In this document: piece after piece, positions 28,467 to 49,934 of the stretch | Numbering within the stretch: the first letter of the stretch is position 1 | Layout: the number at the start of each line of letters is the position of its first letter | Virus record (IMG/VR): IMGVR_UViG_3300017963_000190 | Location: 1 to 64,000 of that record | Direction: 5' to 3' (one strand) | Length of the DNA stretch: 64,000 nucleotides | Translations under genes and position numbers: made by a program | The notes under the pieces: generated by a model | Told to the model about the DNA's origin: nothing | Database searches by the model: none | The model's input: the letters and a program-made list of their open reading frames with translations, nothing else

Positions 28467-28751
28467 TGGCTTTTCCTCCGGTTGCTGGTTTCTGTCCGCT
28501 GCTAGATAAAACATAAGTCGCCTTGTTACGAAGTCAATAGAACAGTGTCGATTTTTACGAACAAAAATAAATCACTTTTCTTGCGCAAAGGGGTTGACCG
28601 CGGCGAAAAGATGGTAACGCGTGAGGGTTAAACCCTAGGGGCGAGGAGAGGAGATCCCCCCGCGGATCCTAATCCTGTTAACTGGGGATCCGAAAGGGGA
28701 TCAAGAGGGGATCTGGCTAGGGATCTGCTTTTGTATAGAGACCTTTTCCTC

Positions 28752-29318
28752 CTATTCCTGGGCTTCTGTGGATCCGATAATCATGGGATCCGTTGGATCG
28801 GGTGCGCCCAGCTCGATTACCTCGAAACCAACGTGATCCTTAAAGGCTTCGTGGCGCGCGTGGTAGCGATCCACGGATTCGCGGGAGCATTCACACTTGC
28901 GCCGGGATCCCAAGCGGCCACAAGGGCAGCTGGGGGCGCCTGCGATAAGATAAAAGTCTGTGTGATCTTCCTTGTCCCCTGCCCGCAGGATCCGCTTGTT
29001 CACGAAACCGTGGCCCACCATTTCGAGCAAGGGCCGTCTGAACTCCGGCATATCGTCAAGGTACAACGTGCCCCCGTTGGCCAGGTGGACTTCGCCGGGG
29101 TATTTCTTGCTCCCCAGCATGCCCGGATTGCTCACGGTATGGTGAGGGGCGCGCAGTGGTCCACCCCTTAGCATGGCCAGCATACGGCCAAAGCGGAGCT
29201 TACCACAGCCCACAGGGCCAACTAGCAGGATAGGCTTGCCTGCGGCCATGGCATTAAGCGCGGCCGTGAGAACGCGCACAGAGACCTTGAGACCGTTGAT
29301 TGTGGTAGTAGGGGCCAT
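28752..29318 (-). CDS. Mg-chelatase-related (ComM/YifB-like) AAA+ ATPase fragment
   Basis: GPVGCGK, PLRAPHHT, PGEVHLANGGTLYLDD.PEF, CPCG. Confidence 0.85.
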   Translation of the reverse strand: MAPTTTINGLKVSVRVLTAALNAMAAGKPILLVGPVGCGKLRFGRMLAMLRGGPLRAPHHTVSNPGMLGSKKYPGEVHLANGGTLYLDDMPEFRRPLLEMVGHGFVNKRILRAGDKEDHTDFYLIAGAPSCPCGRLGSRRKCECSRESVDRYHARHEAFKDHVGFEVIELGAPDPTDPMIIGSTEAQE

Positions 29319-29653
29319 TGCTTTACCTCCGGGTTAGTGCGGGGTGGTTAGCTTCGCTGGGTTTCTCCCGCCGCAAACAAAACATAAGCACTATTGACAG
29401 CGAAACAAGGCGAAAAAGAAAAATAATTAAATGCGCTTTAGGGGTTGACCGCGGCGAAAAGATGGTAACGCGTGAGGGTTTAACCCTTGACGTCCCGCGG
29501 GGCGAGGGGGCGCGGCCGGATCCCCTGGGCCTAATCCTGGTAATCGGGTAGGGTTAACGGATCCCCTTTGGTGTTAGTCCTAGTATCTCATTTTGTATAG
29601 AGGGTGGATCCCCAATGGGGATCCAGGCAGGTTTTGTATAGAGGCCCTTTGGC

Positions 29654-29821
29654 CTATCGGGCAGCTGAGGGCATGATCACCAGGTCGTCGGGCAGGTGAT
29701 CCCCGTAGGGATCCATGAGACGGAGCGCTTGTTTCACCGCCTGGCGCTGTCGCTGCTTGAAACGTCGCCGGGCCTTACCCTTCCCGTTGCCATTGTACTC
29801 TTTTCGATTCGTGCGGGCCAT
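29654..29821 (-). CDS. small basic protein (not in ORF track)
   Basis: 55 aa MARTNRKEY..; CCGGAGGTAAG RBS; resembles 20040-20339. Confidence 0.7.
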   Translation of the reverse strand: MARTNRKEYNGNGKGKARRRFKQRQRQAVKQALRLMDPYGDHLPDDLVIMPSAAR

Positions 29822-29847
29822 TTTCTTACCTCCGGTTGGTTGTTTGG

Positions 29848-30033
29848 TTATTTACGGAGCCCTTCTAGCCATTCCCGATCCAGCTCGTCACGGGCCACGG
29901 CCATTTCCAGGAAATCCCGGAAAGCGTCCGGCGCACCTTGGTTGTCGATGTATTCCAGGGCCAGCGCTAGCGCATCCTCACAGGATAACCCATGGTATTC
30001 TGTGTATTGATCCATGATCATTTCGGCGCTCAT
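29848..30033 (-). CDS. hypothetical protein
   Basis: AAGGAG RBS. Confidence 0.7.
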   Translation of the reverse strand: MSAEMIMDQYTEYHGLSCEDALALALEYIDNQGAPDAFRDFLEMAVARDELDREWLEGLRK

Positions 30034-30038
30034 AGCCT

Positions 30039-30299
30039 TTACTCCTTATCCACCGTTAGTGCCAGCGCCACTTCGCGGCCGTAGCCGGTGAGCCGCATCT
30101 TGATCGGGCCAAAGCTGCCCTCTTTGCGGTGGGCCAGGCCGTTGTTCACCAGGAAATCCGCCTGGTACTCTGCCAGCTCGTGGTGCGAGTAGAAAAACGC
30201 GGGCTTGCACGCGCGCTCATACTCGCCCATTTCCCGCAGGACCTTTGCCGCCGCGGTATTGCAGATCTCGTTGGCCAGTTTCGTTGCTGCCTTGCTCAT
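30039..30299 (-). CDS. hypothetical protein (possible winged helix)
   Basis: LVNNGL..LTGYG. Confidence 0.75.
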   Translation of the reverse strand: MSKAATKLANEICNTAAAKVLREMGEYERACKPAFFYSHHELAEYQADFLVNNGLAHRKEGSFGPIKMRLTGYGREVALALTVDKE

Positions 30300-30360
30300 T
30301 TGCTTTGCCTCCGGTTGAACGTACCAAGAATATAATCACCCTTGATACGTTGTCAATGGG

Positions 30361-30735
30361 CTAGTAGGGCGTATTCTCGAAAACCTCGGGGCCGCCGTCC
30401 GAATCCAAGCTGATGGCCCCTGGAGCCACCGCCCGCGCCAGGGCGAGAATGGAGACCACGACGGCATCGTAGGGGCGATAGGCTGTCTTGCAGAACGAGA
30501 ATCCCGACCCCTCACGTTCCAGGCAGAACGTCTCGTAATCGTCATCCTCTGCCCCGTTGAGCCAGATCTTGTCTTTGGATACCTCCGGCTTGGATCCACT
30601 ATTGGCCAAGCCATCGGCCAGCTTGATCCTGTCATTCCCGGCGGCCTCGATGACATACTTGGCGCCGTCCATGATGCGCGTCCACTGCTTTTCGGTGAAA
30701 GGCTTGCTCTGTTCCCAGTAATGTGTGTAACCCAT
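30361..30735 (-). CDS. conserved phage protein (MGYTHYW family)
   Basis: MGYTHYW..FCKT..PYD..SDG. Confidence 0.8.
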   Translation of the reverse strand: MGYTHYWEQSKPFTEKQWTRIMDGAKYVIEAAGNDRIKLADGLANSGSKPEVSKDKIWLNGAEDDDYETFCLEREGSGFSFCKTAYRPYDAVVVSILALARAVAPGAISLDSDGGPEVFENTPY

Positions 30736-30900
30736 TTGCTTGTCTCCGGTTGGTTAGGGTTTCTTGCTTCGTGTGTAAAAGATAAGTCGCTTTGTTACGA
30801 TGTCAATATAGACAAGCGCAAAAAGAAAAACAAATAAAACGCACGCAGGAGGTTGACCGAGCTCGAAAGATGGTAACGCGTGAGGGTTAAACCTAGGTAG

Positions 30901-30996
30901 GAAAGTGAGCAGCCGAGCAAGCGACCTTCCCGGTATGCCCTAGGCTGTGCACCGCTAAGGGCTGCGTGGGGTCGGCGGATTGCTCGGTCTACTCTA
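30901..30996 (-). ncRNA. putative rod-like small RNA
   Basis: own promoter at 31003-31030, no ORF or RBS, terminal stem GAGTAGACCGAGCAA / TTGCTCGGCTGCTC. Confidence 0.55.
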
Positions 30997-31033
30997 ACCG
31001 TTATGATAAGCGGTTATTATACGTTGTCAAGTT

Positions 31034-31453
31034 TTACAGATACCCCAGGGCACGCCCCCACCGCTTCACACCGTGGTGCTCCGCCTTGGGAATGCAGTCG
31101 GCGATAGCTTCGGCGATGGCCATACCGCGATCCTGGGCGACCTTGACGCGCTCGTTATCGTACCCGTCGCTTTCCGCGTCCAAGTAGAACGTGGCGCTAA
31201 AGGGCATACACTGATGTTCACCCCGAGGGGAACACAGGAAAGCAGCCAGACGCCACGCGTAATAGATGAGCCCTTGACGGTTGCGCTTGTCCTTGGCCAC
31301 CTTGTAGGGCTGCTTAGGGCTGGACGCGCGCAGACGGCCCTTGTTCTTCCCACGGGATACCAAAGCCCCCTGGGCAATGAAGAAATCCTCGGCGCTCAGC
31401 TTGGCCCTGAGGGCTTCCACGTTGACCATTGGCATTTGACTGGTGAAATACAT
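31034..31453 (-). CDS. hypothetical protein
   Basis: CCGGAGGTAG RBS. Confidence 0.8.
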   Translation of the reverse strand: MYFTSQMPMVNVEALRAKLSAEDFFIAQGALVSRGKNKGRLRASSPKQPYKVAKDKRNRQGLIYYAWRLAAFLCSPRGEHQCMPFSATFYLDAESDGYDNERVKVAQDRGMAIAEAIADCIPKAEHHGVKRWGRALGYL

Positions 31454-31633
31454 CTGGCTACCTCCGGTTTAGCGGGGTTGGTTTAGTTTCTCCCGCTGTG
31501 AAAACAAATATAAGCACGCTTGATACGGTGTCAATATGGACAAGCGAAAAAGAAAAAAGAAATAAAGCGCACGATGCCCCTTGCCAAATTCGTTTTCGTG
31601 GTAACGCGTGAAGGTTAAACCCTACCCGCAGAC

Positions 31634-31706
31634 AAAAACGGACCGGCTAGCGTAACTGCCACGGGGCAAGGAATAGGACCCCGCTTGAAACCGCTAGCCG
31701 GTCCGT
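31634..31706 (-). terminator. intrinsic terminator with large structured loop
   Basis: 15-bp stem ACGGACCGGCTAGCG plus U-tract. Confidence 0.65.
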
Positions 31707-31715
31707 GCGCGCTTT

Positions 31716-31979
31716 TTAGAGCGCCTTGGCTGTGGCGCTTTCCAGCTCCACCAAGTCTGCCATGACGGCTTCCGAGTCGCCCCCGAAACCGGAGATGGTA
31801 ACCCAGCCACCCTTGCCCCGGAGCACCCAGCACCCGTTACGGGTTACCTCGGGCGTGCCCCCGTGGTATCTGTCATTGGGCCGCAAGAGGGCGTCGATCA
31901 GCTCCCGCTTGGCCTGGACCTTCACGGCCGTGTCCGAGATAACGGTGAATTTGACTTCGTTGGTTGTCGTGGTGGCCAT
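31716..31979 (-). CDS. hypothetical protein
   Basis: CCGGAGGTAAG RBS. Confidence 0.8.
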   Translation of the reverse strand: MATTTTNEVKFTVISDTAVKVQAKRELIDALLRPNDRYHGGTPEVTRNGCWVLRGKGGWVTISGFGGDSEAVMADLVELESATAKAL

Positions 31980-32165
31980 TGTCTTACCTCCGGCGGGGCT
32001 GGTTGGTTTATTTTCTCCCGCGTTAGATACAAGATAAACACTATTGACAACGTAACAAGGGGCAAAAGGAAGAAAATCGAAAATAGTTTTTACGAAAAAG
32101 TGACCTGTAAGACTTGACGCGATGGATTTAATGGTAACGCGTGAGGGTTTAACCCTTTATGGGGT

Positions 32166-32285
32166 GGGCTCGCGGGGTGCGCGGATCCCCTTCTACGGTG
32201 TTAGTCCTGTAAGAGCGTGGATTAGGGATCCGTTGGGGTGGATCTAGTAACGGATCCCCATTTTGTATAGAGCCGGGGTGGCCCT
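32166..32285. repeat. ~120-bp GGATCC-rich intergenic element, copy 1
   Basis: ends near-identical to 35005-35123. Confidence 0.8.
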
Positions 32286-32296
32286 AGTAGAGCGGA

Positions 32297-32944
32297 TTAA
32301 AGCTCCGACAAGGGGGGATCTTCGTCGGGGTTGTCCTTTTCCCACTGCTCGCGCGCCATTTGGGATCTATGTTGCGCCATGACGTGGTGCTCCCCCTTGG
32401 AGATCAGATAGCGACGCAGCCGTTCTGTCCTGCAATCCAAGCAATCGCAGTCAATCTCTTCCCATAAGCTGAATTCCTCACTGTAGCGATCCAGCTCCCC
32501 TTGTTCCAGCGTTAGGGAGTTGAGGGGGATTGAGGTATCAGCGTAATAGGCTGAGAAAAACAGGTATTGCTTCGTGACACACAGCCGGGGCATTTCGGTC
32601 CTGATGTTTTCGTCGCCAGTGCATGCTTCGGTGATGGCATTGTACAGTTTGGGATCCTCATCTTGATCTACAACGAAGGTCTCGTGCTCCAAGAGGGCAT
32701 CCATTAGACGCTCCGGGATACTACCGGCCATTGGGTGAAACCACATGGCCTCTGTGTCGACCAATTCGATCAGCTGGATCCCCGGCGCCGCTTCCTGGGC
32801 GCGCTCGAAAGCTCCCAGGGCTTCCTGCAATCGGTTGGCGATGATGGGATCCCAGCGGATCACACAGGCTAGGGGATCTGCAGCGTCGCCTTGACCCAGC
32901 TCGTTAGCGTAGATCACCAGGTACTTGTTCATAGTGGCGGTCAT
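32297..32944 (-). CDS. hypothetical protein (paralogue of 46723-47199)
   Basis: NKYLV.YA.ELG..PLACV..MP.L..T..SAYY. Confidence 0.8.
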   Translation of the reverse strand: MTATMNKYLVIYANELGQGDAADPLACVIRWDPIIANRLQEALGAFERAQEAAPGIQLIELVDTEAMWFHPMAGSIPERLMDALLEHETFVVDQDEDPKLYNAITEACTGDENIRTEMPRLCVTKQYLFFSAYYADTSIPLNSLTLEQGELDRYSEEFSLWEEIDCDCLDCRTERLRRYLISKGEHHVMAQHRSQMAREQWEKDNPDEDPPLSEL

Positions 32945-32954
32945 GGTTGATCTC

Positions 32955-33473
32955 CTAGGCGGCTTTGGCCGGTTTCCATTTCTTGGGGATGCGCCCCTCG
33001 AAAATCATTTTGTCCTGGGGCTTCGTGGTGAGCTTATCCCAGAGCTTGCGGTTTTCGGTAGTGTCCCCAGGGGTCTCGTAGGCTTCAACGGCGCCGTCGC
33101 GGATCACATAGGCATATGCAATATCCGCATTGATCCAGGGGTGGATACAGAATCCCAGAAAATCGTTGCCGTTGGTATCGAAGATCTGCTTAATGTAGGT
33201 GCTCTTGGGCATGCTTGGATTGTTCTCTTCGTAGGCCCGCTCTTTTTCCGCGTAGGCCAGGCGATCCTCTGCAGCTCTTTGCACCAGGAACACTAGCAGC
33301 TGGGCGGCGTAATGACCGATGTCAAAATAGCCGCGGCGCTCCCGATACAGCTTGGAGAACTCGGCGATCAGTGGCACCATTTCCTCAGGGTAGCCGTCGC
33401 TGTGGATGTACAGATACACAGGGGTATCCAAGGACATGGTCTCTTCAATGATGATGTTGGCTCGCGTACCCAT
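32955..33473 (-). CDS. conserved phage protein (HxDGYP family)
   Basis: MGTRANI..YIHSDGYP. Confidence 0.8.
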   Translation of the reverse strand: MGTRANIIIEETMSLDTPVYLYIHSDGYPEEMVPLIAEFSKLYRERRGYFDIGHYAAQLLVFLVQRAAEDRLAYAEKERAYEENNPSMPKSTYIKQIFDTNGNDFLGFCIHPWINADIAYAYVIRDGAVEAYETPGDTTENRKLWDKLTTKPQDKMIFEGRIPKKWKPAKAA

Positions 33474-33571
33474 GGCTTCTACCTCCGGTTGCTTGCGGGG
33501 TGGTTTGTGTCCCGCGTTAGATACAAGATAAGTCGCTTTGATACGCTGTCAAGTTTGACGCGCAACAAAAA

Positions 33572-34309
33572 TCATTTTTCTCGGTTACTGTAGCAACGCG
33601 GGCAGTGCCAGCCTTCCTTGTGAGGGGTAAAGGTATGGTTGTCTCCTGTGGTCCCGCAGGTATCGCACGTAAGCGTTGCCAGCTCCCGCCACTCGTGATA
33701 GCATATCTCGCATGCTACGGTGACTGTGCCGTACTCTCGGGGCCTATCAGACAGCATACAGTCATGTTCTGCGCCGCACTTGGGGCAGTTGACTTGTGGG
33801 TCCTTGGTAAGCTCCGCCGCTTCCATGATATGGGTAAGGAGTCGGGAGTTAATTGGACCGGCTACCATACGCTTACCTGATTTGTGGGTGGCGGTGTAGG
33901 CTATGCGCCCCAAGAGTAAAGTGTGGGAGACTTCTACTGCGTAGCTCTCCATGGATATCACAGCGCCACCGGCTTTAATGCGCACTTGGCTTTGCGCGAG
34001 GATATGCTTGCCCTCGGGGGTGTTGGGATCAATTTCCACGGGGCCGTCAAGGTCCGTAACGGATTTAACGATGGGTTTTACCCCTGGCACGTTTTCATCT
34101 AGGGAGTAGAGATCAATCCACGTCGCCCAATTGTCGGTAAACACCAAACGTTCTAGGGAATGGTGCTCGTGTAGTGAGCTGTGCAGAAAAGAGATCCGCT
34201 CTAGCAGCTCGTGTGCATACTTCGGCACCATATGAACTAGCACCGCTGGTCCGTATTGCAGCCCGTAATAGTCACCAGGCAGTAGTAGGATCGTGGTGGG
34301 GTCAGGCAT
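33572..34309 (-). CDS. hypothetical protein with C-terminal Zn module
   Basis: N-terminus similar to 34302-34817, C-terminus similar to 37899-38504. Confidence 0.8.
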   Translation of the reverse strand: MPDPTTILLLPGDYYGLQYGPAVLVHMVPKYAHELLERISFLHSSLHEHHSLERLVFTDNWATWIDLYSLDENVPGVKPIVKSVTDLDGPVEIDPNTPEGKHILAQSQVRIKAGGAVISMESYAVEVSHTLLLGRIAYTATHKSGKRMVAGPINSRLLTHIMEAAELTKDPQVNCPKCGAEHDCMLSDRPREYGTVTVACEICYHEWRELATLTCDTCGTTGDNHTFTPHKEGWHCPRCYSNREK

Positions 34310-34817
34310 CGCTCTTATCTCCGGTAGCAGTGGCTTGCTCTAGCAGCCACGCGGGCCGTAGGGCTTCGGTCTCCAGGTGCCTATCGCCCAAGTTTGCGCT
34401 GTAATACACGTAACCAGGGGAAATAGGGCTAGCGTAGACCTTCGCGCGGTTACCGTCTGCTTTTAACGCAGCTCCCCCGTGGTCTGTGCGCTCCCGGCTT
34501 TGCTTGATGACGTGTTCGCCTGCGGTAGTGGTGGGGTCTACGCGTACACAGTAGTCGCGGTCGCCCTCTGGGTCCATGTCCACAACCCCCGGGATGTTAT
34601 AGTCCAGGGAGTTAAGGTCAACCCATACCCCTTGATTCTCGTAGTAGGCCATACTCGATAGACCATTGTCCTCTAAACTGCGGAAGATATCCACGCGGTT
34701 TAGCAGCTGCTTTGCATACTCCGAGTCAAATTCGAGGAGCAATGCAGGGGACTCGTTGCCAGTGTTGGGAGTAACGCTCGCATGCACTAGCAGATAGGTG
34801 GTTTTCTTGCGTGGCAT
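34302..34817 (-). CDS. hypothetical protein
   Basis: paralogue of neighbour (W.DL.SLD.N.PGV). Confidence 0.8.
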   Translation of the reverse strand: MPRKKTTYLLVHASVTPNTGNESPALLLEFDSEYAKQLLNRVDIFRSLEDNGLSSMAYYENQGVWVDLNSLDYNIPGVVDMDPEGDRDYCVRVDPTTTAGEHVIKQSRERTDHGGAALKADGNRAKVYASPISPGYVYYSANLGDRHLETEALRPAWLLEQATATGDKSDA

Positions 34818-35004
34818 TCTTACCTCCGGTTGCGGCGATTAGTTTCTCCCGCCGTGCAAATAGTTTAAGCACTATTGACAGCGAGTCAAGGCGGCTTAGC
34901 AAGAAAATCGAAAAAGAATCGAAAGAAAATACGTAAAAATAGACGCCAGGGGTTGACGGGGACGAAAAGATGGTAACACGTGGGGTTAAACCCTTCAGGA
35001 CCAG

Positions 35005-35123
35005 GGGCTCGCGGGGTGCGCGGATCCCCTTCCACGGTGTTAGTCCTGTAAACGGATCTAGTGGCGGGCTAGGGGATCCATTTTAGCTCGGATCCCCATT
35101 TTGTATAGAGCCGGGGTGGCCCT
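35005..35123. repeat. ~120-bp GGATCC-rich intergenic element, copy 2
   Basis: see 32166-32285. Confidence 0.8.
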
Positions 35124-35129
35124 TGGGGA

Positions 35130-35531
35130 TCAATAGCTAGTGCCGTAAGCAGCGAAATCCTCACAGTCCAGCTTTTCGCCACGTAGGATCTGCTCTAGCA
35201 CCTCGATTATGCGTTTCTCGTCATCACTGTAGCCCGCAATACCCTGGCTAAGCTTAGCCATGATCTTGTAGTACCGCAGATTGTTGACCAGCGTGGCCAT
35301 GATATCGTCCGAGCACGCTTTCATCAGCTCGTTGGTACGCTCGAAGTGCTCCAGCTCGTTCTGCAAGGGCCGTAGGCGTTCTACCACGTCACTTACGCCC
35401 GCGTGATAGCCCTTATCGAGGTAGCGACTGTGCTTTTCGGTGCTAGGGAACAAGGAACGGCCTCGCTTGTAGCAGCCCCTAACCACGTCCCGGAGTTGCT
35501 CAGTCAATGATTTCTCGTTGTCGGTTGTCAT
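35130..35531 (-). CDS. hypothetical protein (tandem paralogue)
   Basis: EHFERT..ACSDDI.ATLVNNL shared with next gene. Confidence 0.8.
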   Translation of the reverse strand: MTTDNEKSLTEQLRDVVRGCYKRGRSLFPSTEKHSRYLDKGYHAGVSDVVERLRPLQNELEHFERTNELMKACSDDIMATLVNNLRYYKIMAKLSQGIAGYSDDEKRIIEVLEQILRGEKLDCEDFAAYGTSY

Positions 35532-35541
35532 GATGGATCTC

Positions 35542-35928
35542 CTAAAGCCTAAACTCGTATTTCTCGCCCTTCAAACAATCCTCAAGGGCTTTGATAGCAC
35601 AGTCGGTGCCGTAGGTGGGCTCACCTTCACAGCTGAGGACCGAGCGAGTGTTGCGGTACACCTTCAGATTGTTGACCAGGGTGGCCACGATATCATCCGA
35701 GCAGGCCGCTAGCACGTTGTCTGTGCGCTCGAAATGCTCCACGTCTTGACGTAGGGGCAGGAGCTTATCCGCCACGTGACGCACGCCGCACATAAAGCCC
35801 AGCTTGTACTCCCGGCTAGCGGTTTCCAGGCCGCCGCCGTTGAAGGTGCGGGCGAGTTGGTTAGCGTACTGAATAACGCCTAGGAGACGAGCGGACAGGG
35901 AATCGGGTTTGCGTTGTGTGTTGGCCAT
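35542..35928 (-). CDS. hypothetical protein (tandem paralogue)
   Basis: same motif as 35130-35531. Confidence 0.8.
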   Translation of the reverse strand: MANTQRKPDSLSARLLGVIQYANQLARTFNGGGLETASREYKLGFMCGVRHVADKLLPLRQDVEHFERTDNVLAACSDDIVATLVNNLKVYRNTRSVLSCEGEPTYGTDCAIKALEDCLKGEKYEFRL

Positions 35929-35944
35929 TGATCTTTCCTCCGGT

Positions 35945-36175
35945 TTAGGCGAGCACTGCCATAGCAGCGTTTACACCGTCCACATAGGGATCACTATCCA
36001 CGTCAATTCCGGCGCAGGCGTGAGCCAGGATCATGGACACAACGGCTTCCACGCCTTCGTTGTGTCGCGAGATATCGAGCACCTTGGGCAGCTTCACAGA
36101 TCCAGCCCCGGTGTCCGTGTCGGCTTCCACGATGATATCGCCGAAGGGCGTGGAAATTATCATTGTCTTTTGCAT
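35945..36175 (-). CDS. hypothetical protein
   Basis: ILAHACAGIDV motif; consensus RBS. Confidence 0.8.
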   Translation of the reverse strand: MQKTMIISTPFGDIIVEADTDTGAGSVKLPKVLDISRHNEGVEAVVSMILAHACAGIDVDSDPYVDGVNAAMAVLA

Positions 36176-36268
36176 GGCTTGTTACCTCCGGTTGCGGCGG
36201 GGTGGTTTATCTCGCTTTCGCGGCCCGCTGTGCAACAAACATAAGTCGCTTTGATACGGTGTCAAGTC

Positions 36269-36865
36269 TTACGCGCAAGAAAAAGCGAAATGGGTTTGGG
36301 GATCCGAAAGCTCCGCCTCTTCCATGGCTTCCTTGACTACCTCTGGATCTACTTCGCCGTAGAATCCCCAGCAGGAGTCAACGATCTCGCCGTCGCGTTC
36401 GATCTGGTAGCCGTAGACGTTCCCTTGCAGGTAATCGTCCAGGAGCTTGACGGTGGATCTCATGATCTCTTCTAGGAAGCGCCTACGCTTGGCGCTGATT
36501 TTTTCCCACTGATAGATTTGACGCGCTTCCCTACAGGTAATGAAGATCCACCCGATCTGGCCGCTATCCCAAGGGCAACCGAAACCCGTGGTATTAACGG
36601 ACAAGCCGGAGTGATCTATCATGTAGATCGGCAACCGGACCACGGGGTGGGATTTACAGTAATCCTCGAAGTCATGGGGAGTAGCGAAGTCGTTGCAATT
36701 TCCGAAGTCATAGCCACGATGCCACATAACCACGCGCACGTCGTGATCCCATTCCTGGATCGGGTTTTCCGCATAGCCTGGATCGTCCAGCATGAATTTG
36801 ATTGTGGCTCCACAGTGAGTGAAGGGCTTGAAGGGATTCGCTAAGATTGCTTCCATCGTATTCAT
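36269..36865 (-). CDS. conserved phage protein
   Basis: LPIYMIDHSG..WDSGQIG..DSCWGFYG. Confidence 0.85.
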   Translation of the reverse strand: MNTMEAILANPFKPFTHCGATIKFMLDDPGYAENPIQEWDHDVRVVMWHRGYDFGNCNDFATPHDFEDYCKSHPVVRLPIYMIDHSGLSVNTTGFGCPWDSGQIGWIFITCREARQIYQWEKISAKRRRFLEEIMRSTVKLLDDYLQGNVYGYQIERDGEIVDSCWGFYGEVDPEVVKEAMEEAELSDPQTHFAFSCA

Positions 36866-36881
36866 GATTGTTACCTCCGGC

Positions 36882-37088
36882 TTAGTCTTCGTTGCGGCTG
36901 TTCATAGCGCCCAGAATAGCGCCCATGACGCCTTCGGGATCCTCGGCCCATTCCTGGGAATCCCAGTAGGCCACCTCGCCCACAATTGGATCCACAATGC
37001 GCACGTAAGCACACGGTTCTGGATACGACGGGCACCGCAGTTCTGCACCCGTTTCGAGGGGGATCTTGGTTTCGTTGCTACTTGGCAT
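36882..37088 (-). CDS. hypothetical protein
   Basis: EVAYWDSQEWAEDP; consensus RBS. Confidence 0.8.
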   Translation of the reverse strand: MPSSNETKIPLETGAELRCPSYPEPCAYVRIVDPIVGEVAYWDSQEWAEDPEGVMGAILGAMNSRNED

Positions 37089-37271
37089 GGCTCTTACCTC
37101 CGGTTAGCGGGGGTTGGTTTCTCCCGCCGTGCAACTAACATAAGCACTATTGACAGCGTAACAAGGGGCGCAACGAAAATAAATAAAAATAGTTTAGGGG
37201 TTGACGGCCCGCGGATCGTGGTAACGCGTGACGGTTTAACCGTGGCCGGAGCGGGGCCGTAGCCCCAGGGC

Positions 37272-37574
37272 TTACCAGTCGAACACGGGGAGCTGCACAG
37301 CCTGGGGCACCGTTGCGTCAAAACGGACAAACGAGCACCCTTCGTCGAAGGCTAGACCGATGATCTCACAAAATGAATCGCTGAACCCAGCGCTGCGCAG
37401 ATCTGCTAAGCGCTCAGCAATGCTCTGCCCCGGGCAGTTGATCTGTACCAGCCACCCCGCGCGTTCGATAGGATAGACCAGCACCCACCCTTTCAACTCC
37501 TGCATTAACTGTTGATCTTCCCGGGTGTGGTGCGATGGGGACACTCGCATAGTGGTTTCTATTCGTGGGAACAT
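37272..37574 (-). CDS. hypothetical protein
   Basis: paralogue of the C-terminus of 37899-38504. Confidence 0.75.
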   Translation of the reverse strand: MFPRIETTMRVSPSHHTREDQQLMQELKGWVLVYPIERAGWLVQINCPGQSIAERLADLRSAGFSDSFCEIIGLAFDEGCSFVRFDATVPQAVQLPVFDW

Positions 37575-37587
37575 AGATCACCTCCGA

Positions 37588-37809
37588 CTAGGGCTTGAAA
37601 GCTGTGTCGTTGGCTTCTAGCCACTTCAGGAATTCCGGTGGATACTCCAGGCCACCCGAGCCTATCTCAGCGTCCCGCACCGCCGCCTGGATACGCCCCA
37701 AGTATTTGAAGGGCAAGCGGTAAGTGTAGTAATTGGAAGGCGCTTTGGAGCGCTTGAGTTTCCACACGCCGGTCTGGGGCGTGAAGTACAGGTGCTCGTT
37801 TTTAGACAT
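37588..37809 (-). CDS. hypothetical protein
   Basis: start MSKNEH behind consensus RBS. Confidence 0.75.
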   Translation of the reverse strand: MSKNEHLYFTPQTGVWKLKRSKAPSNYYTYRLPFKYLGRIQAAVRDAEIGSGGLEYPPEFLKWLEANDTAFKP

Positions 37810-37898
37810 TGGCTTTACCTCCGGTTGGCGTTGGTTTTCTTGCGCCGTTAGATACAAGGTAATCATCCTTGTTACGGTGTCAATAGGCAGATTGACTT

Positions 37899-38504
37899 TT
37901 ACCAGTTATACGTGGGGAATCCGTCAAGCACGGTGGCGTCGCAGTCGAAACGAACGTGCGTACACTGGTTTTTGTGCGCCGCTTCCAGGATGTTGCGAAA
38001 GGCTTTGCTGAAACCGTAGTGTTTAAGGGTCTCCAGGTATTCGTCCAAACCCACCTGGGGCACGTAGACAATGTGCCCCTCACCCAGAAACGTTGCCACG
38101 TCCGGGTTATCGTCCATCAGCTCGTTGTCCAGCTCGCTATGGTGGGCGGTGGAAATGGTGAGTACCCGGGTAATGCAGTCCTGGATCGTGGACCCTTCGG
38201 GCTTGTAGGGCTTGTTACGCTTGGAGTAGCAGCATTCACCGTACCATTGGCCATCGTGGGGAGTAGCGGAGTGAGTAGGCGCCGGCTTACCACAACGGCA
38301 ACAGGTGATCTCCAAGGGCTCTTTCCACTCGTGATGGCAGATCTCACAATCTAGCACGATGTAATCCTTGCCCACAAAACCATCCCACAGGATACACTCG
38401 TATTCCACCCCGCACTTGGGGCAGTTGGCTTGGGGATCCATCATTTCCAGCTCGTCTTCGATCTCCTGGATTACTTCCTGCGTGGTCTTTTGATCGGTCG
38501 TCAT
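37899..38504 (-). CDS. Zn-module fusion protein
   Basis: start MTTDQK; LTISTAH..VRFDCDA. Confidence 0.8.
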   Translation of the reverse strand: MTTDQKTTQEVIQEIEDELEMMDPQANCPKCGVEYECILWDGFVGKDYIVLDCEICHHEWKEPLEITCCRCGKPAPTHSATPHDGQWYGECCYSKRNKPYKPEGSTIQDCITRVLTISTAHHSELDNELMDDNPDVATFLGEGHIVYVPQVGLDEYLETLKHYGFSKAFRNILEAAHKNQCTHVRFDCDATVLDGFPTYNW

Positions 38505-38675
38505 TGGCTTTACCTCCGGTTGGCGTTGGTTTCTTCCGCCGTGCAAATAAGATAAGTCGCTTTGATACGGTGTCAAGTCTTACGCGCAGAAAATAAAAAC
38601 AAATAAAAGCACGGTGGCCCCTTGACCGAGCTCGGATCGTGGTAACGCGTGAGGGTTTAACCCATGGTGCGGAAG

Positions 38676-38730
38676 AAAAAGCCCCCGGTGACCTTTGCAG
38701 CGGGTAACCACTCCCGCTAGTCACCGGGGG
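38676..38730 (-). terminator. intrinsic terminator with branched loop
   Basis: 11-bp stem CCCCCGGTGAC plus U-tract. Confidence 0.65.
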
Positions 38731-38745
38731 ACCGGAGATTACTTG

Positions 38746-39015
38746 TTAACCGTCGTCGCTAACGCGACAGAGTATCAGCTCGTCTAGCCTACCCTCGGCT
38801 TCCATCGCATCCATAAGCGCCCAGGGTACTTGTTTGTAGTGACCGCAAGGGCCGCGTTTAGGCGTGAGCCATACGATACCGTGCCAAAGGTGCGGCCGAG
38901 CACAGCAGCCGTTGTAACCGTACTTGCCCATGGGCTGCAAGTCTTCGCGCATATCCGCGATCGGTAGGAAGTGGATACACGTTGGGCAGTGCTTGTCAAT
39001 CTTGACGCTAGGCAT
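38746..39015 (-). CDS. Cys-rich hypothetical protein
   Basis: CPTCIHF..GCC..C. Confidence 0.7.
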   Translation of the reverse strand: MPSVKIDKHCPTCIHFLPIADMREDLQPMGKYGYNGCCARPHLWHGIVWLTPKRGPCGHYKQVPWALMDAMEAEGRLDELILCRVSDDG

Positions 39016-39739: not shown

Positions 39740-40019
39740 GGCTTTACCTCCGGTTGGCGGGGGGTTGGTTAGTTTTTCTCCCGCCGTGTGAAAAAGATAA
39801 GCACGCTTGACAGCGACACAAGGCCAATTGAGCAAAAAAGTGAAAATAGTTTTTCGGCGCCTATCATTTTCGATTTATTTTCGCTTTGTGGGTTGACCGC
39901 GGCGAAAAGATGGTAACGCGTGAGGGTTAAACCCTACCCCGCGAGGGGCGCTCAGGGCTCCCGAGGGGTCACCCTGAGCGTTAGTCCTCTAATATTCTAT
40001 ATTAGAGTGCGCCGCAGTG

Positions 40020-40274
40020 CTATTTGGTAGGCTTATCTGATTTTGTATAGAGGTCCTTTGGGGTTTGATGTAGGGCCGCTTGTCCAGTATCGCGCAGCGT
40101 TTCAGCAGCCATAAGCACCTGTTCATAGATTGCTAGCGCGTCCGAGGTTTCCGCGTACTTAAACCCCTTTATTACGTCAATTGCATGGATCAGCTGGGCT
40201 CGCCAGTCTTCAATGGCTTCCTGCATAGCCTTGTAGCCGGCTTCCCAGTTGGGGTTATCGTGCTCGGTTGCCAT
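40020..40274 (-). CDS. hypothetical protein
   Basis: AAGGAG RBS. Confidence 0.7.
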   Translation of the reverse strand: MATEHDNPNWEAGYKAMQEAIEDWRAQLIHAIDVIKGFKYAETSDALAIYEQVLMAAETLRDTGQAALHQTPKDLYTKSDKPTK

Positions 40275-40286: not shown

Positions 40287-41177
40287 TTAGGCTGCTAACT
40301 CAGTTGCCAGCTCCGCTTCTGTTGTGGCTACCTCCCGCAGGTCCCGCACCCCGAAAAATTCCTTGGCCTTTTTGCGCACGGTAGCGTCTACGTATTGGAC
40401 CGCTTGTCGACTGCAGCCGGTGAGATCTGCTACCTCTTGAAGGGTGAGGGGATCATCGGAAAGTACCCGTAGGTCTAACACGATCCGTTGCTTTGGGGAA
40501 AGGGTCTGGGCGAACTCGTTGAACATCTGGCGCAGCTCTGATTTCCATTCCACGCGGCGGTAGACTTGCTCAGGGGTGGGGATGTTGCCTTGTAGAGTAT
40601 CGCCAAAGGTGACTCTATGCTCTCGCCTGGAGTAGGATGCGGTAGATACCTCATTTTTACCGCGCAATCGAACAAGCATAGCCTTGACGGTGGGGATGTC
40701 TACGTCAAGCGCTTTGGCTAAGCGCTCCGGGGTTGCTTCGATACCCTGGGCTTCTAGGGCAGCTTGCGTCTTAGACAGACCCCACAGACATTTACGCTGG
40801 CCTCCCGTGGTACCCGTGCGCACAATAAACAGGTTATCTCGAAAGGCTTCGAGCACGCGAGCCCTAACCCACTGCATAGCGTATGTGGTAAACCGCGTGC
40901 CCTTGTCTGTGTCGAATCTGTCGATGGATTCCATGAGGCCCACGTTGCCCGCTTGGATCAGGTCTAGCAGGGTTTCCTTGCAGCCGTTGCTATACCGCTT
41001 GGCTACCTTCACGACCAGGCGTAGGTTGTGCTCCGCGAGCCGTTGCCTAGCGCGTTGGTTGCCGTCGGTGGCCCGCTCTAGCAGCGCCCTTTCATCCTCG
41101 GCGGATAGCAAGGGGAATTTGCCCGCGGCTTGCATGTAAAAATTGAGAGTATCGAGATCGGTTGAAGTATTGGCCAT
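40287..41177 (-). CDS. RNA polymerase sigma factor, sigma-70 family (RpoH/sigma32-like)
   Basis: PLLSAEDE, HNLRLVVKVA, DLIQAGNVGL, RFTTYA.QW, RpoH-box-like IVRTGTTGGQRK, TLQEVA region 4. Confidence 0.92.
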   Translation of the reverse strand: MANTSTDLDTLNFYMQAAGKFPLLSAEDERALLERATDGNQRARQRLAEHNLRLVVKVAKRYSNGCKETLLDLIQAGNVGLMESIDRFDTDKGTRFTTYAMQWVRARVLEAFRDNLFIVRTGTTGGQRKCLWGLSKTQAALEAQGIEATPERLAKALDVDIPTVKAMLVRLRGKNEVSTASYSRREHRVTFGDTLQGNIPTPEQVYRRVEWKSELRQMFNEFAQTLSPKQRIVLDLRVLSDDPLTLQEVADLTGCSRQAVQYVDATVRKKAKEFFGVRDLREVATTEAELATELAA

Positions 41178-41565
41178 TTTTACCTCCGGTTGTTAGCGCG
41201 CTTTTCTTGCCCGCTCGATATAGGTTAATCACGCCTTGCTACGGAGTCAATAGAAAAAACACAACCGAGTGTCGATTTTTTCGCAGGCGGGCGCCGGACG
41301 GCAGGGTTAAACCGTCACGCGTTACCATTCCCCTTTACGTTGTCAAGGTAGCAAAGCGAAAAAATCGGATTATACTGGGGTCGGAAGGTTTCACGGGCTG
41401 GAAAAACGATCGGTCTAGTAGGAGATCTGCGCGCGGCGGGGGCCGCCCGCCACTTTTGCTCTAAGAACGTCTGGAAGGGGAGCTGCTGTAAGGGTTTTGA
41501 GCTCAGGCCAGATTTTGTATAGAGAGGGGATTGCGTATTTTGTATAGAGGGGAGGGGCTGAAATT

Positions 41566-46041: not shown

Positions 46042-46156
46042 GGTAGCTAAACCATCCTTGAAATAGGAAGGAGCAGCCCAGTCACTGGTTTGGATACTGG
46101 GTTTTCTCGGTGAGATAACCGGGCTGCTCCTTCGATAGGAATTAACTAGCGGTTTG

Positions 46157-46414: not shown

Positions 46415-46440
46415 CTTGTTACCTCCATTTAGCCGAGAGC

Positions 46441-46662: not shown

Positions 46663-46722
46663 GGCTCTTACCTCCGTTCGTTGATGGTATCAGTATAAGC
46701 GGCATTGTTACGCTGTCAAGTC

Positions 46723-47199: not shown

Positions 47200-47319
47200 T
47201 ACGTTACCTCCATGTACATGCCCAGTTTAATCAGCTATGCTACGTAGTCAAGTTGGATGGAAATAAAAATGGGGCCACGCAGCAGAACGTGACCCCCAGG
47301 AGGAAAGCGATGCCAGTAA

Positions 47320-47727: not shown

Positions 47728-47796
47728 TTTTGTTACCTCCGTTCGTTGTTGCACCTAGTATAATCGGCTTTGTTGCACTGTCAAGCCTTTACTAGG

Positions 47797-48408
47797 CTAG
47801 TAGTACCGGCATACCGGGCGCTTCCATACGCATCCAGCAACGGTATCTCGGAAGAGCTTTTTTAGGTTGGCCTTGACGAACCCCTCCTTGAGGGAATACT
47901 TGTTTCCATCGTAATCCTCTGCGAGGTAATAAAATTGGCCATTAGTGTCCTGCATCTGCTTGAGAACGCGGAGGTTTATACAACCGTTCACGTCAAATAC
48001 AGCTAGATCGCCTGGCCACAGCATGAAGAGAGAAGGCAGCGGCCCCGCATCCTGGCATGCCTTGCCGAAATCCTCCGAGAAGTAATCCTGGAGATTATCC
48101 TGAATGCACTTTTTGAGCTGGGCCTCCGATTCTCTGTAAACAGGCTGCAGCTTCGGGTGCTCAAAGCACACGACCGCCCTTTCACAGTCGTTTTCGTACC
48201 AGAGACGGCCACTGTAATGCTGCCCAATGTACTGAGCTTGCAACGAAAGATTCTGCTCCGCCCACTTGTAGGTTACCGCGAGACCTCCATCGCCGTCCTC
48301 GGTATCGTACTGGACCACCCCCGGGAAAATATGGACCGCGTAGTCGGCCCTTCCCCATGGGGTTTGTGTTCCTTTCTTAGGCTCGAAGCTTTTCACCTTC
48401 ACGTTCAT
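47797..48408 (-). CDS. conserved MGE protein (TPWG..WYExDC motif)
   Basis: motifs; consensus RBS. Confidence 0.8.
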   Translation of the reverse strand: MNVKVKSFEPKKGTQTPWGRADYAVHIFPGVVQYDTEDGDGGLAVTYKWAEQNLSLQAQYIGQHYSGRLWYENDCERAVVCFEHPKLQPVYRESEAQLKKCIQDNLQDYFSEDFGKACQDAGPLPSLFMLWPGDLAVFDVNGCINLRVLKQMQDTNGQFYYLAEDYDGNKYSLKEGFVKANLKKLFRDTVAGCVWKRPVCRYY

Positions 48409-48461
48409 GGCTGTTACCTCCGTTCGTTTTTGTTCTTACATTATCAGTATAAGCAGCTTTG

Positions 48462-48668
48462 TTACGCTGTCAAGCCAAGCTCCTCAGGAGTCTTAGTTGG
48501 TTTTCTGCCGCTCCAGTGCGTTGTCTCTGTCCCACATTTTTTGTGCCGTTGCTGGACCCACTGCCTTTTCTCCTCGCAGTAGTAAGCCTCCCAGCACTGG
48601 CGCCGGGGTACCCAGCGCCTGCACTCAGGGCACCAGAAGTGATCGTCGTAGCCAACGTATGGTTCCAT
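48462..48668 (-). CDS. small Cys-rich protein
   Basis: GGAGG RBS. Confidence 0.65.
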   Translation of the reverse strand: MEPYVGYDDHFWCPECRRWVPRRQCWEAYYCEEKRQWVQQRHKKCGTETTHWSGRKPTKTPEELGLTA

Positions 48669-48669
48669 G

Positions 48670-49020
48670 CTAGCATCCTCCTGCGCACGTGCACACACGG
48701 CAGCCGTTTTCGTCGTAGCTCTCAGGCATGTGGACACTGACGCCCAGTTTCTTTTTCAGCAGTGCCAGAAGCGCGGCACCGTCGGCTTCATTGACGTGCA
48801 TCTTTTCCATGATGTATCCAATATCGACAGTTTGGTACGCACGAACGGCCATCACGGTGCCTCCGCTTCCGCCGTTGCGCATCCACGCGATCATGCTGCC
48901 GAAGTCGCAGTCGTCCTCAAAGCTCACCTTGTCAGAAAGGATGCAGCCGTACCGCGTCCCATTACCGGGCTCCCAGATGACAAAGCGCGTAGACTCTCCT
49001 TCAATAAATCGTGTAGGCAT
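48670..49020 (-). CDS. hypothetical protein
   Basis: EPGNGTRY motif. Confidence 0.75.
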   Translation of the reverse strand: MPTRFIEGESTRFVIWEPGNGTRYGCILSDKVSFEDDCDFGSMIAWMRNGGSGGTVMAVRAYQTVDIGYIMEKMHVNEADGAALLALLKKKLGVSVHMPESYDENGCRVCTCAGGC

Positions 49021-49032
49021 CCTCTTACCTCC

Positions 49033-49665
49033 TTAGAACTGGCCGCTGTCTTTCATGGCCTGGTCAAGCTGCTCTACGAGCTGGATAACTTGCTGCTCCA
49101 GTCGCAGCCATGGGGCAATCGTGCGCGTCTTGAACCGCTTGGGGCGATCGTAATAATCAGAAGAGGACCCCACGTAACCGCCGTCTAGTTTTTCAGCTGC
49201 AGCATGCACCCGCAACGACAACTGGCGCCGTTTAACTGCCAGCTCCCCACGTCCCATCATTGGGATATCCTTAACATGGGGAGCCTCTGGCTTTACATCG
49301 TCCCACACGAGCCGCGCTTGGACGATCTTACATTCGGTACCCGTGAATACGTAGCGCCACCGCTCCCCTTCCTCCCCAGCCATCTCGATGAAGGAGCCCG
49401 CTTCCACGAAAGGCCCTAGGGCCTTAAAAAAAGCGTCGTCATCTACAGATGCTTTTTCGCCAGCGAAACCGATGTCCTCGATGTTCCCCTCGGCGTCGGT
49501 GGAGTACACCTCCCATCCCATCTCGAACAAGATGTCATCGAAAGACGCGCGTTTGCTGGGGTTGCCTGTCTGCCACTCCATGTTGATGAGGGCCTGGCGC
49601 GCGGGCTCGATCTTCTCGGCTCTCATGAAAAAGCTAGTCGCGATGCAGTTGATTCCGTATCCCAT
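49033..49665 (-). CDS. hypothetical protein
   Basis: LGPFV..GSFIEM.GEEGERWR. Confidence 0.8.
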   Translation of the reverse strand: MGYGINCIATSFFMRAEKIEPARQALINMEWQTGNPSKRASFDDILFEMGWEVYSTDAEGNIEDIGFAGEKASVDDDAFFKALGPFVEAGSFIEMAGEEGERWRYVFTGTECKIVQARLVWDDVKPEAPHVKDIPMMGRGELAVKRRQLSLRVHAAAEKLDGGYVGSSSDYYDRPKRFKTRTIAPWLRLEQQVIQLVEQLDQAMKDSGQF

Positions 49666-49934
49666 GGCTTACCTCCGTTTGTTTCATCCGGCCACAGGAT
49701 AATCAGACGGGCAGCGTGCGTCAAGTTTGACAGGTGCCTCAGAGAAAATAAGACAAAATGCATTTTCGGGGTTGCGCTAGCCAGAATAATGGTAACGCGT
49801 GAGGGTTTAACCCTTTATGGGGAGGGTGTGGGGTGCCCTCGGCGAGGACGATTAAGATAATAAGTTTCTAAGAGCGACGATTTGTTGGCGCGTAGAGTTT
49901 GACAGGGAGCCAGGCGGGTTTTGTATAGAGGGGG

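What the first reader, a model, noticed from the sequence alone, without database searches (positions are those of the whole stretch)
28635..49930. Second dispersed motif TTTTGTATAGAG within a GGATCC-rich ~120-bp module adjoining the element
Seen: nine exact copies, one inverted copy (19070) and one variant (58357). Most lie about 100-240 bp to the right of a 23-bp element, at or just after the 3' end of a gene. The intervening DNA shares GGATCCCC and TTARTCCT blocks, and 32166-32285 and 35005-35123 are near duplicates. Inference: read on the minus strand (CTCTATACAAAA) it could be a -10-like box for the phage RpoH-like sigma or a late promoter giving short RNAs. It could instead be a second binding site of a bipartite element.
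Basis: partly seen in the sequence, partly recalled or inferred. Interest (0 to 1): 0.6.

Follow-up and report, generated by a model that had tools for sequence, protein, structure and literature searches.

The report
Invariant boundary motif in phage cassettes
A 12-17-base sequence that never varies marks the front edge of about a dozen control regions between early genes of an uncultured giant phage and its relatives; it takes the place of an ordinary transcription terminator and is probably a new kind of polar transcription signal, but no data show which strand reads it.

Summary
TTTTGTATAGAG occurs 9 times exactly on the + strand, once inverted and once as a variant (0.17 expected). The window is the first 64 kb of a 260-kb jumbo-phage contig, and all its genes lie on the minus strand. 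In gene sense the motif reads (TTCT)CTCTATACAAAAT and usually lies 3-24 nt after a stop codon.

A relative with only 60% DNA-polymerase identity carries 10 exact copies, all on one strand, and lacks the RpoH-like sigma. About 30 metagenome contigs carry the motif 62-119 nt from the GGTTWAACC palindrome that forms the core of the 23-bp element. Variants are almost absent.

The motif heads a rigid unit with a TAGNCT site exactly 60-61 nt away. The unit stays with the gene on its palindrome side, not with the gene whose stop codon it follows. It excludes the U-tract terminator that heads other cassettes (0/52 against 27/78). The GGATCC richness is specific to this subfamily.

Best reading (about 0.37): a factor-dependent polar stop or insulator for early transcription. 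Rivals are a minus-strand phage promoter and a plus-strand antisense promoter, each about 0.2. Transcript-end mapping would decide between them.

The parts
28729..28740 (-). Motif B copy (gene sense CTCTATACAAAA), 11 nt after the stop of gene 28752-29318
29591..29643 (-). Tandem pair of B copies (29591-29602 and 29632-29643), 51 and 10 nt after the stop of gene 29654-29821, with a GGATCCCC/GGGGATCC inverted repeat between them
32261..32272 (-). B copy, 24 nt after the stop of gene 32297-32944
35099..35110 (-). B copy, 19 nt after the stop of gene 35130-35531
40041..40052 (-). B copy inside the last 33 nt of a predicted 84-aa ORF (read as LYTK); it heads the cassette of the DUF7227 gene 39008-39835, as in G001 and L182
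41513..41549 (-). Tandem pair of B copies (41513-41524 and 41538-41549), 335-360 nt upstream of the RpoH-like sigma gene 40287-41177
49919..49930 (-). B copy, 4 nt after the stop of gene 49935-50609
58357..58368 (-). Only variant copy (TTTTGTGTAGAG), 3 nt after a stop; same position as exact copies in G001 (20284) and L163, ahead of the 100-aa 'MPCD' gene and the AAA ATPase operon; its palindrome has decayed
19070..19081 (+). Only inverted copy, in the 1.35-kb non-coding region 18691-20039; the next ~50 nt resemble the stretch that follows copy 41513
28637..28728 (.). Module between palindrome and B (92 nt, 2 GGATCC, 6 GATC)
32157..32260 (.). Module (104 nt, 3 GGATCC); TTAGTCCT site at 32201, 60 nt from B; partial duplicate of 34995-35098
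34995..35098 (.). Module (104 nt, 3 GGATCC); TTAGTCCT at 35040
39936..40040 (.). Module without GGATCC (105 nt); TTAGTCCT at 39981; GC-rich hairpin next to the palindrome
49815..49918 (.). Module without GGATCC (104 nt)
28613..28636 (.). 23-bp element with GGGTTAAACC palindrome core partnering B 28729; equivalent partners at 29464-29487, 32133-32156, 34971-34994, 39912-39935 and 49791-49814
28510..28537 (-). Sigma-70-like promoter of the downstream gene (TTGACT-16-TATGTT); equivalents at 32031-32058, 34862-34889, 41222-41250, 49696-49724 and 58214-58242

Best explanation
The motif, called B here, reads TTCTCTCTATACAAAAT in gene sense. It is the invariant outer end of a rigid unit of about 80 bp. 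The unit comprises B, an optional TAGNCT site 14 nt away, a T-rich centre about 35 nt away, and a TAGNCT site exactly 60-61 nt away.

The unit sits where the other early-gene cassettes of this phage lineage carry an intrinsic terminator: between the stop codon of the preceding minus-strand gene and the GGTTWAACC palindrome of the next cassette.

I propose that it is a factor-dependent, polar stop or insulator for leftward early transcription. A lineage-specific factor, not the RpoH-like sigma, would recognise B either as DNA (like a stoperator roadblock with helper sites) or in the nascent G-free RNA (like a loading site for a termination factor). RNA polymerase arriving from the upstream gene would then be halted before it enters the cassette on the palindrome side.

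Shown: invariance, strand polarity, position, fixed spacing, exclusion of U-tract terminators, linkage to the palindrome-side gene, and independence from sigma-1. Inferred: that the unit stops transcription, and that the stop is conditional.
For: 1. B is conserved exactly across deep divergence. G001 has 10 exact copies, all on one strand, while its PolA is 60% and its HNH protein 54% identical. Sixty-one unique copies were collected from about 30 contigs. Their flanks were not forced by the search yet are also conserved: A at -1 in 56/61 and A at +12 in 51/61. Only 1-2 variants occur in 301 kb, whereas the promoter-like motif A has 10 exact and 10 intergenic single-mismatch copies.
2. B follows a stop codon by 3-12 nt in 28 of 49 cases and by at most 27 nt in 36 of 49. 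The preceding genes are unrelated: 46 ORFs fall into 38 clusters.
3. B occupies the terminator slot. A T-run of 4 or more within 30 nt before the palindrome occurs in 0/52 B cassettes against 27/78 cassettes without B (Fisher 2e-7; seen by eye).
4. The unit stays with the gene on its palindrome side: 47 such genes fall into 30 clusters, and one family recurs in 8 contigs. There are four shared positions between G000 and G001.
5. In G001, three B units lie between convergent genes, where neither neighbouring gene has its start facing the unit, so it cannot act as their upstream region.
6. The spacing to helper sites is fixed, as expected for a nucleoprotein assembly.
Against: No transcript data could be obtained, so stopping of transcription is not shown.

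Two conserved 'bare' copies fit poorly. One lies 15-22 nt before the HNH start codon with no other promoter in between. The other lies inside the deacetylase reading frame. A constitutive stop would silence these genes, so the stop must be conditional, or masked by translation if B is read as RNA.

No binding factor was identified. The fixed sites all lie on one side of B, and stop codons next to B are TAG or TAA but never TGA; both features also suit a + strand promoter. Hairpin folding shows no strand bias. The + strand genes of G001 have weak codon scores.
Confidence: 0.37

Rival explanations
1. B is a phage-specific single-element promoter on the minus (gene) strand, with CAAAAT as its -10 and TTCTCTCTATA as an upstream extension. 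It would give the downstream gene a second transcription start that does not depend on host sigma-70.
For: Of 22 exact copies in G000 and G001, 21 point the same way as the genes. B stays with the downstream gene. No U-tract terminator lies between B and that gene, as a promoter would require. B is the only signal in the 15-22 nt before the HNH start codon in both phages. The conserved block ends sharply at a T, as a -10 element ends at T-7, and shares AAAAT with motif A. Single-element phage promoters are known, for example phiEco32 gp36 with AATGTA (PMC12276001).
Against: B is far more invariant than motif A. In three G001 units B would fire into the 3' end of a convergent gene. One conserved copy lies inside a reading frame, 45 nt past its start. 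The helper sites at fixed spacing would lie downstream of the start point. No cognate factor was found: sigma-1 is absent from G001 and sigma-2 is RpoD-like. Every full cassette already has a sigma-70-like promoter.
Confidence: 0.2
2. B is a promoter on the + strand, with TATAGA as its -10 and a start near the conserved TA. It would fire back into the preceding early operon, so that antisense RNA or head-on collision shuts off early genes.
For: All auxiliary features lie upstream of B in this orientation and at promoter-like distances. These are TTAATA exactly 17 bp before TATAGA in about 12 of 61 copies, a T-rich block where an UP element would sit, and a distal site about 77 nt before the putative start. 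Stop codons next to B give YTA on this strand and are never TGA. B shares TTGTA with motif A and resembles the AATGTA of phiEco32. The only inverted copy (19070) would then point with the genes, 137 nt upstream of a motif A copy.
Against: It would mean about ten conserved promoters per genome that are all antisense to genes, which I know of no precedent for. TATAGA lacks the T at -7. The loss of the sense-strand terminator is not explained. B stays with the gene behind it, not with the gene it would silence. No T7-like polymerase was found, although the controls for that search also gave no signal.
Confidence: 0.2
3. B is an RNA-level processing or stability site in read-through early transcripts. 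It would play the role of the RNase III sites of T7 but would be linear and sequence-specific.
For: B lies between genes in cassettes that lack terminators, so polycistronic RNA is expected there. It is G-free and strand-specific.
Against: The helper sites at exact DNA spacing and the copy inside a conserved reading frame fit poorly. No structure signal or RNA family match was found. The linkage to the downstream gene is not explained.
Confidence: 0.07
4. B is a DNA target of a phage enzyme, for example a single-strand nick or homing site of the HNH endonuclease whose gene it flanks.
For: The HNH gene is flanked by two direct B copies, 685 and 690 bp apart, in the two phages. The invariance and the single-strand orientation suit an enzyme site.
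Against: Exclusion of terminators, linkage to particular genes, and fixed spacing to the palindrome and TAGNCT sites are all transcription-like features. The copies are confined to the early region.
Confidence: 0.06

Closest known systems
Stoperators of cluster A mycobacteriophages (L5 gp71 type; PMC9283540, PMC6550527)
   Same: An asymmetric site of about 13 bp, present in many copies per genome, in short gaps after genes. Its orientation is tied to the direction of transcription, and it is proposed to halt elongation in a polar way.
   Different: Here the phage is an uncultured jumbo phage with no repressor identified. The site never overlaps a promoter. It is longer (12-17 nt) and essentially invariant. 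It has helper sites at fixed spacing and is confined to the early region.
PeSL cassettes of T4-type phages (PMC2839356, PMC4122927)
   Same: Repeated composite terminator-plus-early-promoter cassettes between small genes of a hyperplastic region, which move together with genes. The cassettes without B in this phage fit that description well.
   Different: B cassettes lack the U-tract terminator. In its place they carry B and its helper sites, and they add a palindromic operator-like element.
Single-element phage promoters (phiEco32 gp36 AATGTA, PMC12276001; T4 late TATAAATA, from my own knowledge)
   Same: A short conserved element without a -35 box that is specific to the phage.
   Different: B is longer and invariant, is not spread over middle or late genes, and no cognate sigma was found.
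Lambda nutR/tR1 region (boxA, rut sites, Rho-dependent terminator; from my own knowledge)
   Same: A pyrimidine-rich, G-poor sequence just after a stop codon, ahead of a termination zone 60-100 nt downstream. CUCU..ACAA recalls boxA.
   Different: Alignment to boxA needs a gap. There is no boxB hairpin. No terminator lies downstream for an antiterminator to override (0/52). Natural rut sites are degenerate, not invariant.

Membership tests
Sigma-70-family phage promoter (-10-like element) | Lies upstream of genes and points the same way | tested here: met
   21 of 22 exact copies in G000 and G001 are co-oriented with the genes; B stays with the downstream gene. However, three G001 units face convergent genes.
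Sigma-70-family phage promoter (-10-like element) | Cognate phage sigma conserved wherever the motif occurs | tested here: not met
   The RpoH-like sigma-1 is absent from G001, which has 10 copies. Sigma-2 is conserved but RpoD-like, so its link to B is open.
Sigma-70-family phage promoter (-10-like element) | Copies are degenerate around a consensus | tested here: not met
   1-2 variants in 301 kb against about 60 exact copies; motif A in the same genome shows the usual degeneracy.
Sigma-70-family phage promoter (-10-like element) | Primary transcript 5' end a few nt downstream | not testable with these tools
Stoperator (polar repressor roadblock) | Asymmetric multi-copy site whose orientation follows transcription, located after genes | tested here: met
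Stoperator (polar repressor roadblock) | The same site also serves as an operator at an early promoter, with a cognate repressor encoded | tested here: not met
   No B copy overlaps a promoter-like site. No repressor was identified: the small conserved early proteins gave no informative Pfam hit.
PeSL-type terminator-promoter cassette | Stem-loop terminator directly followed by an early promoter, repeated in a plastic region | tested here: not met
   Met by many cassettes without B (27/78 have a T-run). B cassettes have a GC hairpin but no U tract (0/52). The region is shuffled between G000 and G001.
Intrinsic terminator | GC-rich hairpin directly followed by a U run | tested here: not met
   Only 32261 and 35099, and loosely 29632, have a hairpin before the TTTT of B on the + strand; the others do not.
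Lambda-type nut site | boxA consensus, boxB hairpin, and a downstream terminator to override | tested here: not met
   boxA aligns only with a gap (my own reading). The repeats after B are direct in some copies and inverted in others. No U-tract terminator lies downstream. No NusG-like gene was found.
T7-type single-subunit polymerase promoter | A phage RNA polymerase gene is present and the promoters point with the genes | tested here: not met
   PF00940 was not found in G000 or in the complete G001, but the controls also gave no signal, so absence is not proven. The TATAGAGAGA resemblance is on the strand opposite to the genes.
Known RNA family | Match to an Rfam covariance model | tested here: not met
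   No match at gathering scores over 64 kb, and none at E<=1 over 28.4-35.2 kb.

The most novel reading that the evidence does not exclude
B units are a previously undescribed class of programmable polar transcription boundary in lytic jumbo phages. An invariant 17-nt signal with phased helper sites replaces intrinsic terminators at chosen cassettes. A lineage-specific factor uses it to cut off, or to oppose from the other strand, early transcription at about ten defined points.
Probability: 0.3. Interest if true: 0.7.

Novelty: new variant of a known kind. Interest (0 to 1): 0.55.

Why it matters
Gene regulation in uncultured jumbo phages is almost unknown. This work defines a conserved, testable regulatory grammar for a whole sediment phage lineage. 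Its parts are the palindrome, the phased TAGNCT sites, the invariant boundary motif B, sigma-70-like early promoters, and a separate genome-wide motif A.

If B is a factor-dependent polar stop, or a conserved set of antisense promoters, it would be a new way for a lytic phage to end its early programme. It would also be a compact orthogonal part for synthetic biology.

The composite pattern of palindrome, a gap of about 100 nt, and B is also a sensitive marker for finding members of this lineage in metagenomes.

Tried and rejected
- 23-bp element as a 17-mer in viral contigs: no hit.
- B as a 14-mer in viral contigs: only single chance hits.
- 17-mer in 185,579 species genomes: 99 scattered single hits, at chance level. 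This gives no host mimicry, prophage or host clue.
- Megablast of the region against cultured phages: nothing. By PolA protein the best match is 27%.
- Relatives sought through sigma-1, HNH and the 478-aa protein: only G001 and G003, plus distant phages without B.
- RNA ideas: no tRNA or Rfam match. The fold energy of the hairpin next to the palindrome shows no strand bias, 21 against 27.
- Phage polymerase or antiterminator: no T7-like polymerase, no NusG-like domain, no beta-prime motif, and no PHROG polymerase among the giant proteins.
- A fixed -35 box on either side of B: none.
- Weaker sigma-70-like promoters in B cassettes: no difference, 8.9 against 8.9.
- B as part of a conserved 3' end of a gene family: rejected, because the upstream genes are unrelated.
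- Copies with two mismatches genome-wide are at chance level.
Full report
**1. The observation**

TTTTGTATAGAG occurs nine times exactly on the + strand, once inverted (19070) and once with one mismatch (58357). The expectation is 0.17. The window is the first 64 kb of a 260,067-bp IMG/VR virus record, estimated 74% complete, so it is a jumbo phage. That record holds 12 exact copies, the other two at 65397 and 66082, and none beyond 66 kb. Copies with two mismatches are at chance level.

**2. Gene context**

I called genes with a codon-usage caller trained on the genome's own long ORFs. It places every gene from 0.4 to 178 kb on the minus strand. In gene sense the motif, called B below, reads CTCTATACAAAA.

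Printing the intergenic regions in gene sense shows a repeated cassette in this order:
- the stop codon of the upstream gene;
- either a GC hairpin with a U run, or B followed by about 100 nt;
- the 23-bp element, AGGGTTWAACCCTCACGCGTTACC, whose core is a palindrome;
- an A/T-rich tract;
- a sigma-70-like promoter, TTGACA-N16/17-TATNTT, with a conserved spacer;
- a 5' UTR hairpin;
- the ribosome-binding site AACCGGAGGTAA.

B lies 3-24 nt after the stop codon in most copies. The GGATCC richness is real but holds for only five of the nine window modules. The two 'near duplicate' modules share two nearly identical blocks around a diverged middle.

**3. Relatives**

No cultured phage is close; the best PolA match is 27% identical. 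Searching by PolA found a complete 349,793-bp relative, G001, at 60% identity. G001 carries 10 exact B copies, all on one strand and all clustered in its early region. It shows the same layout of stop codon, B, about 100 nt, a GGTTWAACC palindrome and then a promoter.

A composite search for GGTTWAACC-N88-118-B in metagenome contigs returned 55 stretches. About 32 of these are true relatives, with GC of 0.47-0.62 and shared architecture. They come from many different samples. About 17 are low-GC chance hits. The search also identified my own record and G001 by their contig names.

From 61 unique copies the motif extends to ATTTTGTATAGAGAGAA. The flanking bases were not forced by the search pattern. 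In 301 kb of related DNA there are only one or two variant copies.

A second motif, A (CTTGTAAAATA), behaves differently. It lies upstream of genes and points with them across both genomes. It is conserved in G001, with 17 exact copies against 0 for the control pattern. It shows ordinary promoter-like degeneracy.

**4. Which factor reads B**

G000 encodes two sigma factors:
- Sigma-1 (window 40287-41177) has regions 1.2 to 4.
- Sigma-2 (184.8 kb) has a C-terminal half that resembles RpoD-like phage sigmas.

G001 has only sigma-2. B therefore does not depend on sigma-1.

No T7-like polymerase, NusG-like protein or beta-prime motif was found. A 17-mer scan of 185,579 species genomes gave only chance-level single hits, so there is no sign of a host motif or a prophage.

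**5. What constrains the function**

(a) The genes that end just before B are unrelated: 46 ORFs fall into 38 clusters. The genes on the palindrome side recur: 47 fall into 30 clusters. One family of about 115 aa appears in 8 contigs. The DUF7227 gene, the 'MPCD' plus AAA-ATPase operon and a 296-aa gene each recur behind B in several phages.

(b) B excludes the intrinsic terminator. A T-run of 4 or more within the 30 nt before the palindrome occurs in 0 of 52 B cassettes against 27 of 78 cassettes without B (Fisher 2e-7).

(c) B is one end of a rigid unit. A TAG[AGT]C[CT] site starts exactly 61 or 60 nt from B in 31 of 61 copies, and within a wider window (52-68 nt from B) in 40 of 61. A second copy starts 14 nt from B in 14 of 61 copies, and a T-rich block lies about 35 nt away. 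The palindrome, in contrast, lies at a looser 62-119 nt.

(d) Two 'bare' copies flank an HNH endonuclease gene in both phages. One lies 15-22 nt before its start codon. The other lies inside the signal-peptide codons of a translationally coupled polysaccharide deacetylase gene.

(e) In G001, three B units lie between a minus-strand gene and the 3' end of a probable + strand gene. These + strand genes are paralogues sharing the N-terminal motif M..LP.YIRVNG..Y.L, although their codon scores are weak.

(f) Stop codons next to B are TAG (21) or TAA (9) and never TGA. The background counts are 93, 68 and 48.

(g) Folding of the GC hairpin shows no strand bias, and there is no Rfam match.

**6. Interpretation**

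The most general properties of B are these: it follows the end of a minus-strand gene, it replaces the terminator, it belongs to the cassette on its palindrome side whichever way that gene points, and it is read with near-absolute sequence specificity.

The reading that explains most of these together is a factor-dependent polar stop or insulator. It resembles the stoperators of cluster A mycobacteriophages (PMC9283540), built into PeSL-like cassettes (PMC4122927). I give this about 0.37.

If B is read in the nascent RNA, translation would mask the two bare copies, which removes the main objection. If B is read as DNA, the stop must be conditional.

Two promoter readings remain open, each at about 0.2:
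- The minus-strand promoter fits gene orientation, the HNH copy and the lack of downstream terminators. It does not fit the convergent units, the invariance, or helper sites lying downstream of the start.
- The + strand promoter fits the one-sided, promoter-like layout of the helper sites and the TA bias. It implies about ten conserved antisense promoters per genome.

RNA processing and a nick or homing site are less likely. No read data could be obtained, so the orientation of action is not settled.

**7. Verdict**

The feature is real and strongly conserved. It is coupled to the 23-bp element. It is not a target of the RpoH-like sigma and not a late promoter. It is a new variant among phage regulatory cassettes, with an unusually invariant boundary signal whose mechanism can now be tested directly.

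Noticed in passing
window 18933-18941 (-), 62450-62458 (-); G000 82616, 159744, 186295, 210477, 215275, 217367, 224846, 230619, 233956, 239055, 245719, 250829: A second conserved motif, A: (g)TCTTGTAAAATAc. It lies 7-150 nt upstream of genes and points with them on both genome arms. G001 has 17 exact copies against 0 for the control. It shows ordinary promoter-like degeneracy. At 230619 the spacing TAAAAT-N6-ATG suggests a leaderless start. It is a likely middle or late promoter whose factor is unknown.
   Followed up: partly
window 20000-62000, e.g. 28510-28537, 30329-30356, 31507-31534, 33525-33552: The early promoters are sigma-70-like but have a conserved spacer (TTGACAnCGTAaCAAgGCGAcTTATnTT). 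An A/T-rich tract precedes them. A conserved 5' UTR hairpin (GCGGGAGA...CCCCGC) and the ribosome-binding site AACCGGAGGTAA follow. The scan found 36 promoter-like sites against 11.4 expected.
   Followed up: partly
window 19952-49807 (21 copies; inverted at 23371, 23754, 26473 and 41310): In this phage and in contigs L208 and L210, the 23-bp element extends to TTGAC-N13-GGTAACGCGTGAGGGTTWAACCC, which is promoter-like with a spacing typical of sigma-32. G001-type relatives, which lack sigma-1, have only cGTTcGGTTWAACC. A link between this extension and sigma-1 is possible but was not tested.
   Followed up: partly
window 18691-20039: A 1.35-kb non-coding region lies where GC content steps from 0.50 to 0.56 and GC skew changes sign. 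It holds GGATCC clusters, repeated GTGTGACA-like words, two sigma-70-like sites, the inverted B copy and a motif A copy. It may be a replication origin or a major control region. The block to its left (0.4-18.7 kb) has almost no homologues in the 160 kb of G001 that I compared.
   Followed up: no
G000 64800-66093 (L010:800-2093), just right of the window: An HNH endonuclease gene (65458-66066) is flanked by two direct B copies. A polysaccharide deacetylase gene is translationally coupled to it and carries B in its signal-peptide codons (LYTK). The same arrangement occurs in G001, where the proteins are only 54% identical.
   Followed up: yes
window 40287-41177 (-); G000 184831-186264 (+): The phage has two sigma factors. 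Sigma-1 has regions 1.2-4 and is absent from the complete relative G001. Sigma-2 (477 aa) has a long N-terminal extension and an RpoD-like C-terminal half, is conserved in G001, and is followed directly by a motif A copy.
   Followed up: partly
G001 5201-5863, 8510-8947, 348939-349202 (L026, L029), + strand: Probable + strand paralogous genes (N-terminal motif M..LP.YIRVNG..Y.L) are embedded in the otherwise minus-strand early region of G001. Each ends just before a palindrome. A shared TTATTnTCTAGCA lies about 25 nt before their start codons. A fourth copy near 345.4-345.8 kb looks frameshifted.
   Followed up: partly
whole G000; window 20000-40000: GGATCC occurs 162 times, 2.4 times the base-composition expectation, with 43 sites in 20-40 kb, in both coding and non-coding DNA. 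GATC is 1.4 times expectation.
   Followed up: partly
G000 87608-90595 (L011:3608-6595, -): The family A DNA polymerase carries an N-terminal uracil-DNA glycosylase superfamily domain in the same 995-aa protein. This fusion is conserved at 60% identity in six IMG/VR contigs.
   Followed up: no
window 28752-29318 (-): A 188-aa protein matches only the central part of the Mg-chelatase ChlI / sigma-54-activator AAA+ fold. Its gene lies between two B cassettes.
   Followed up: no
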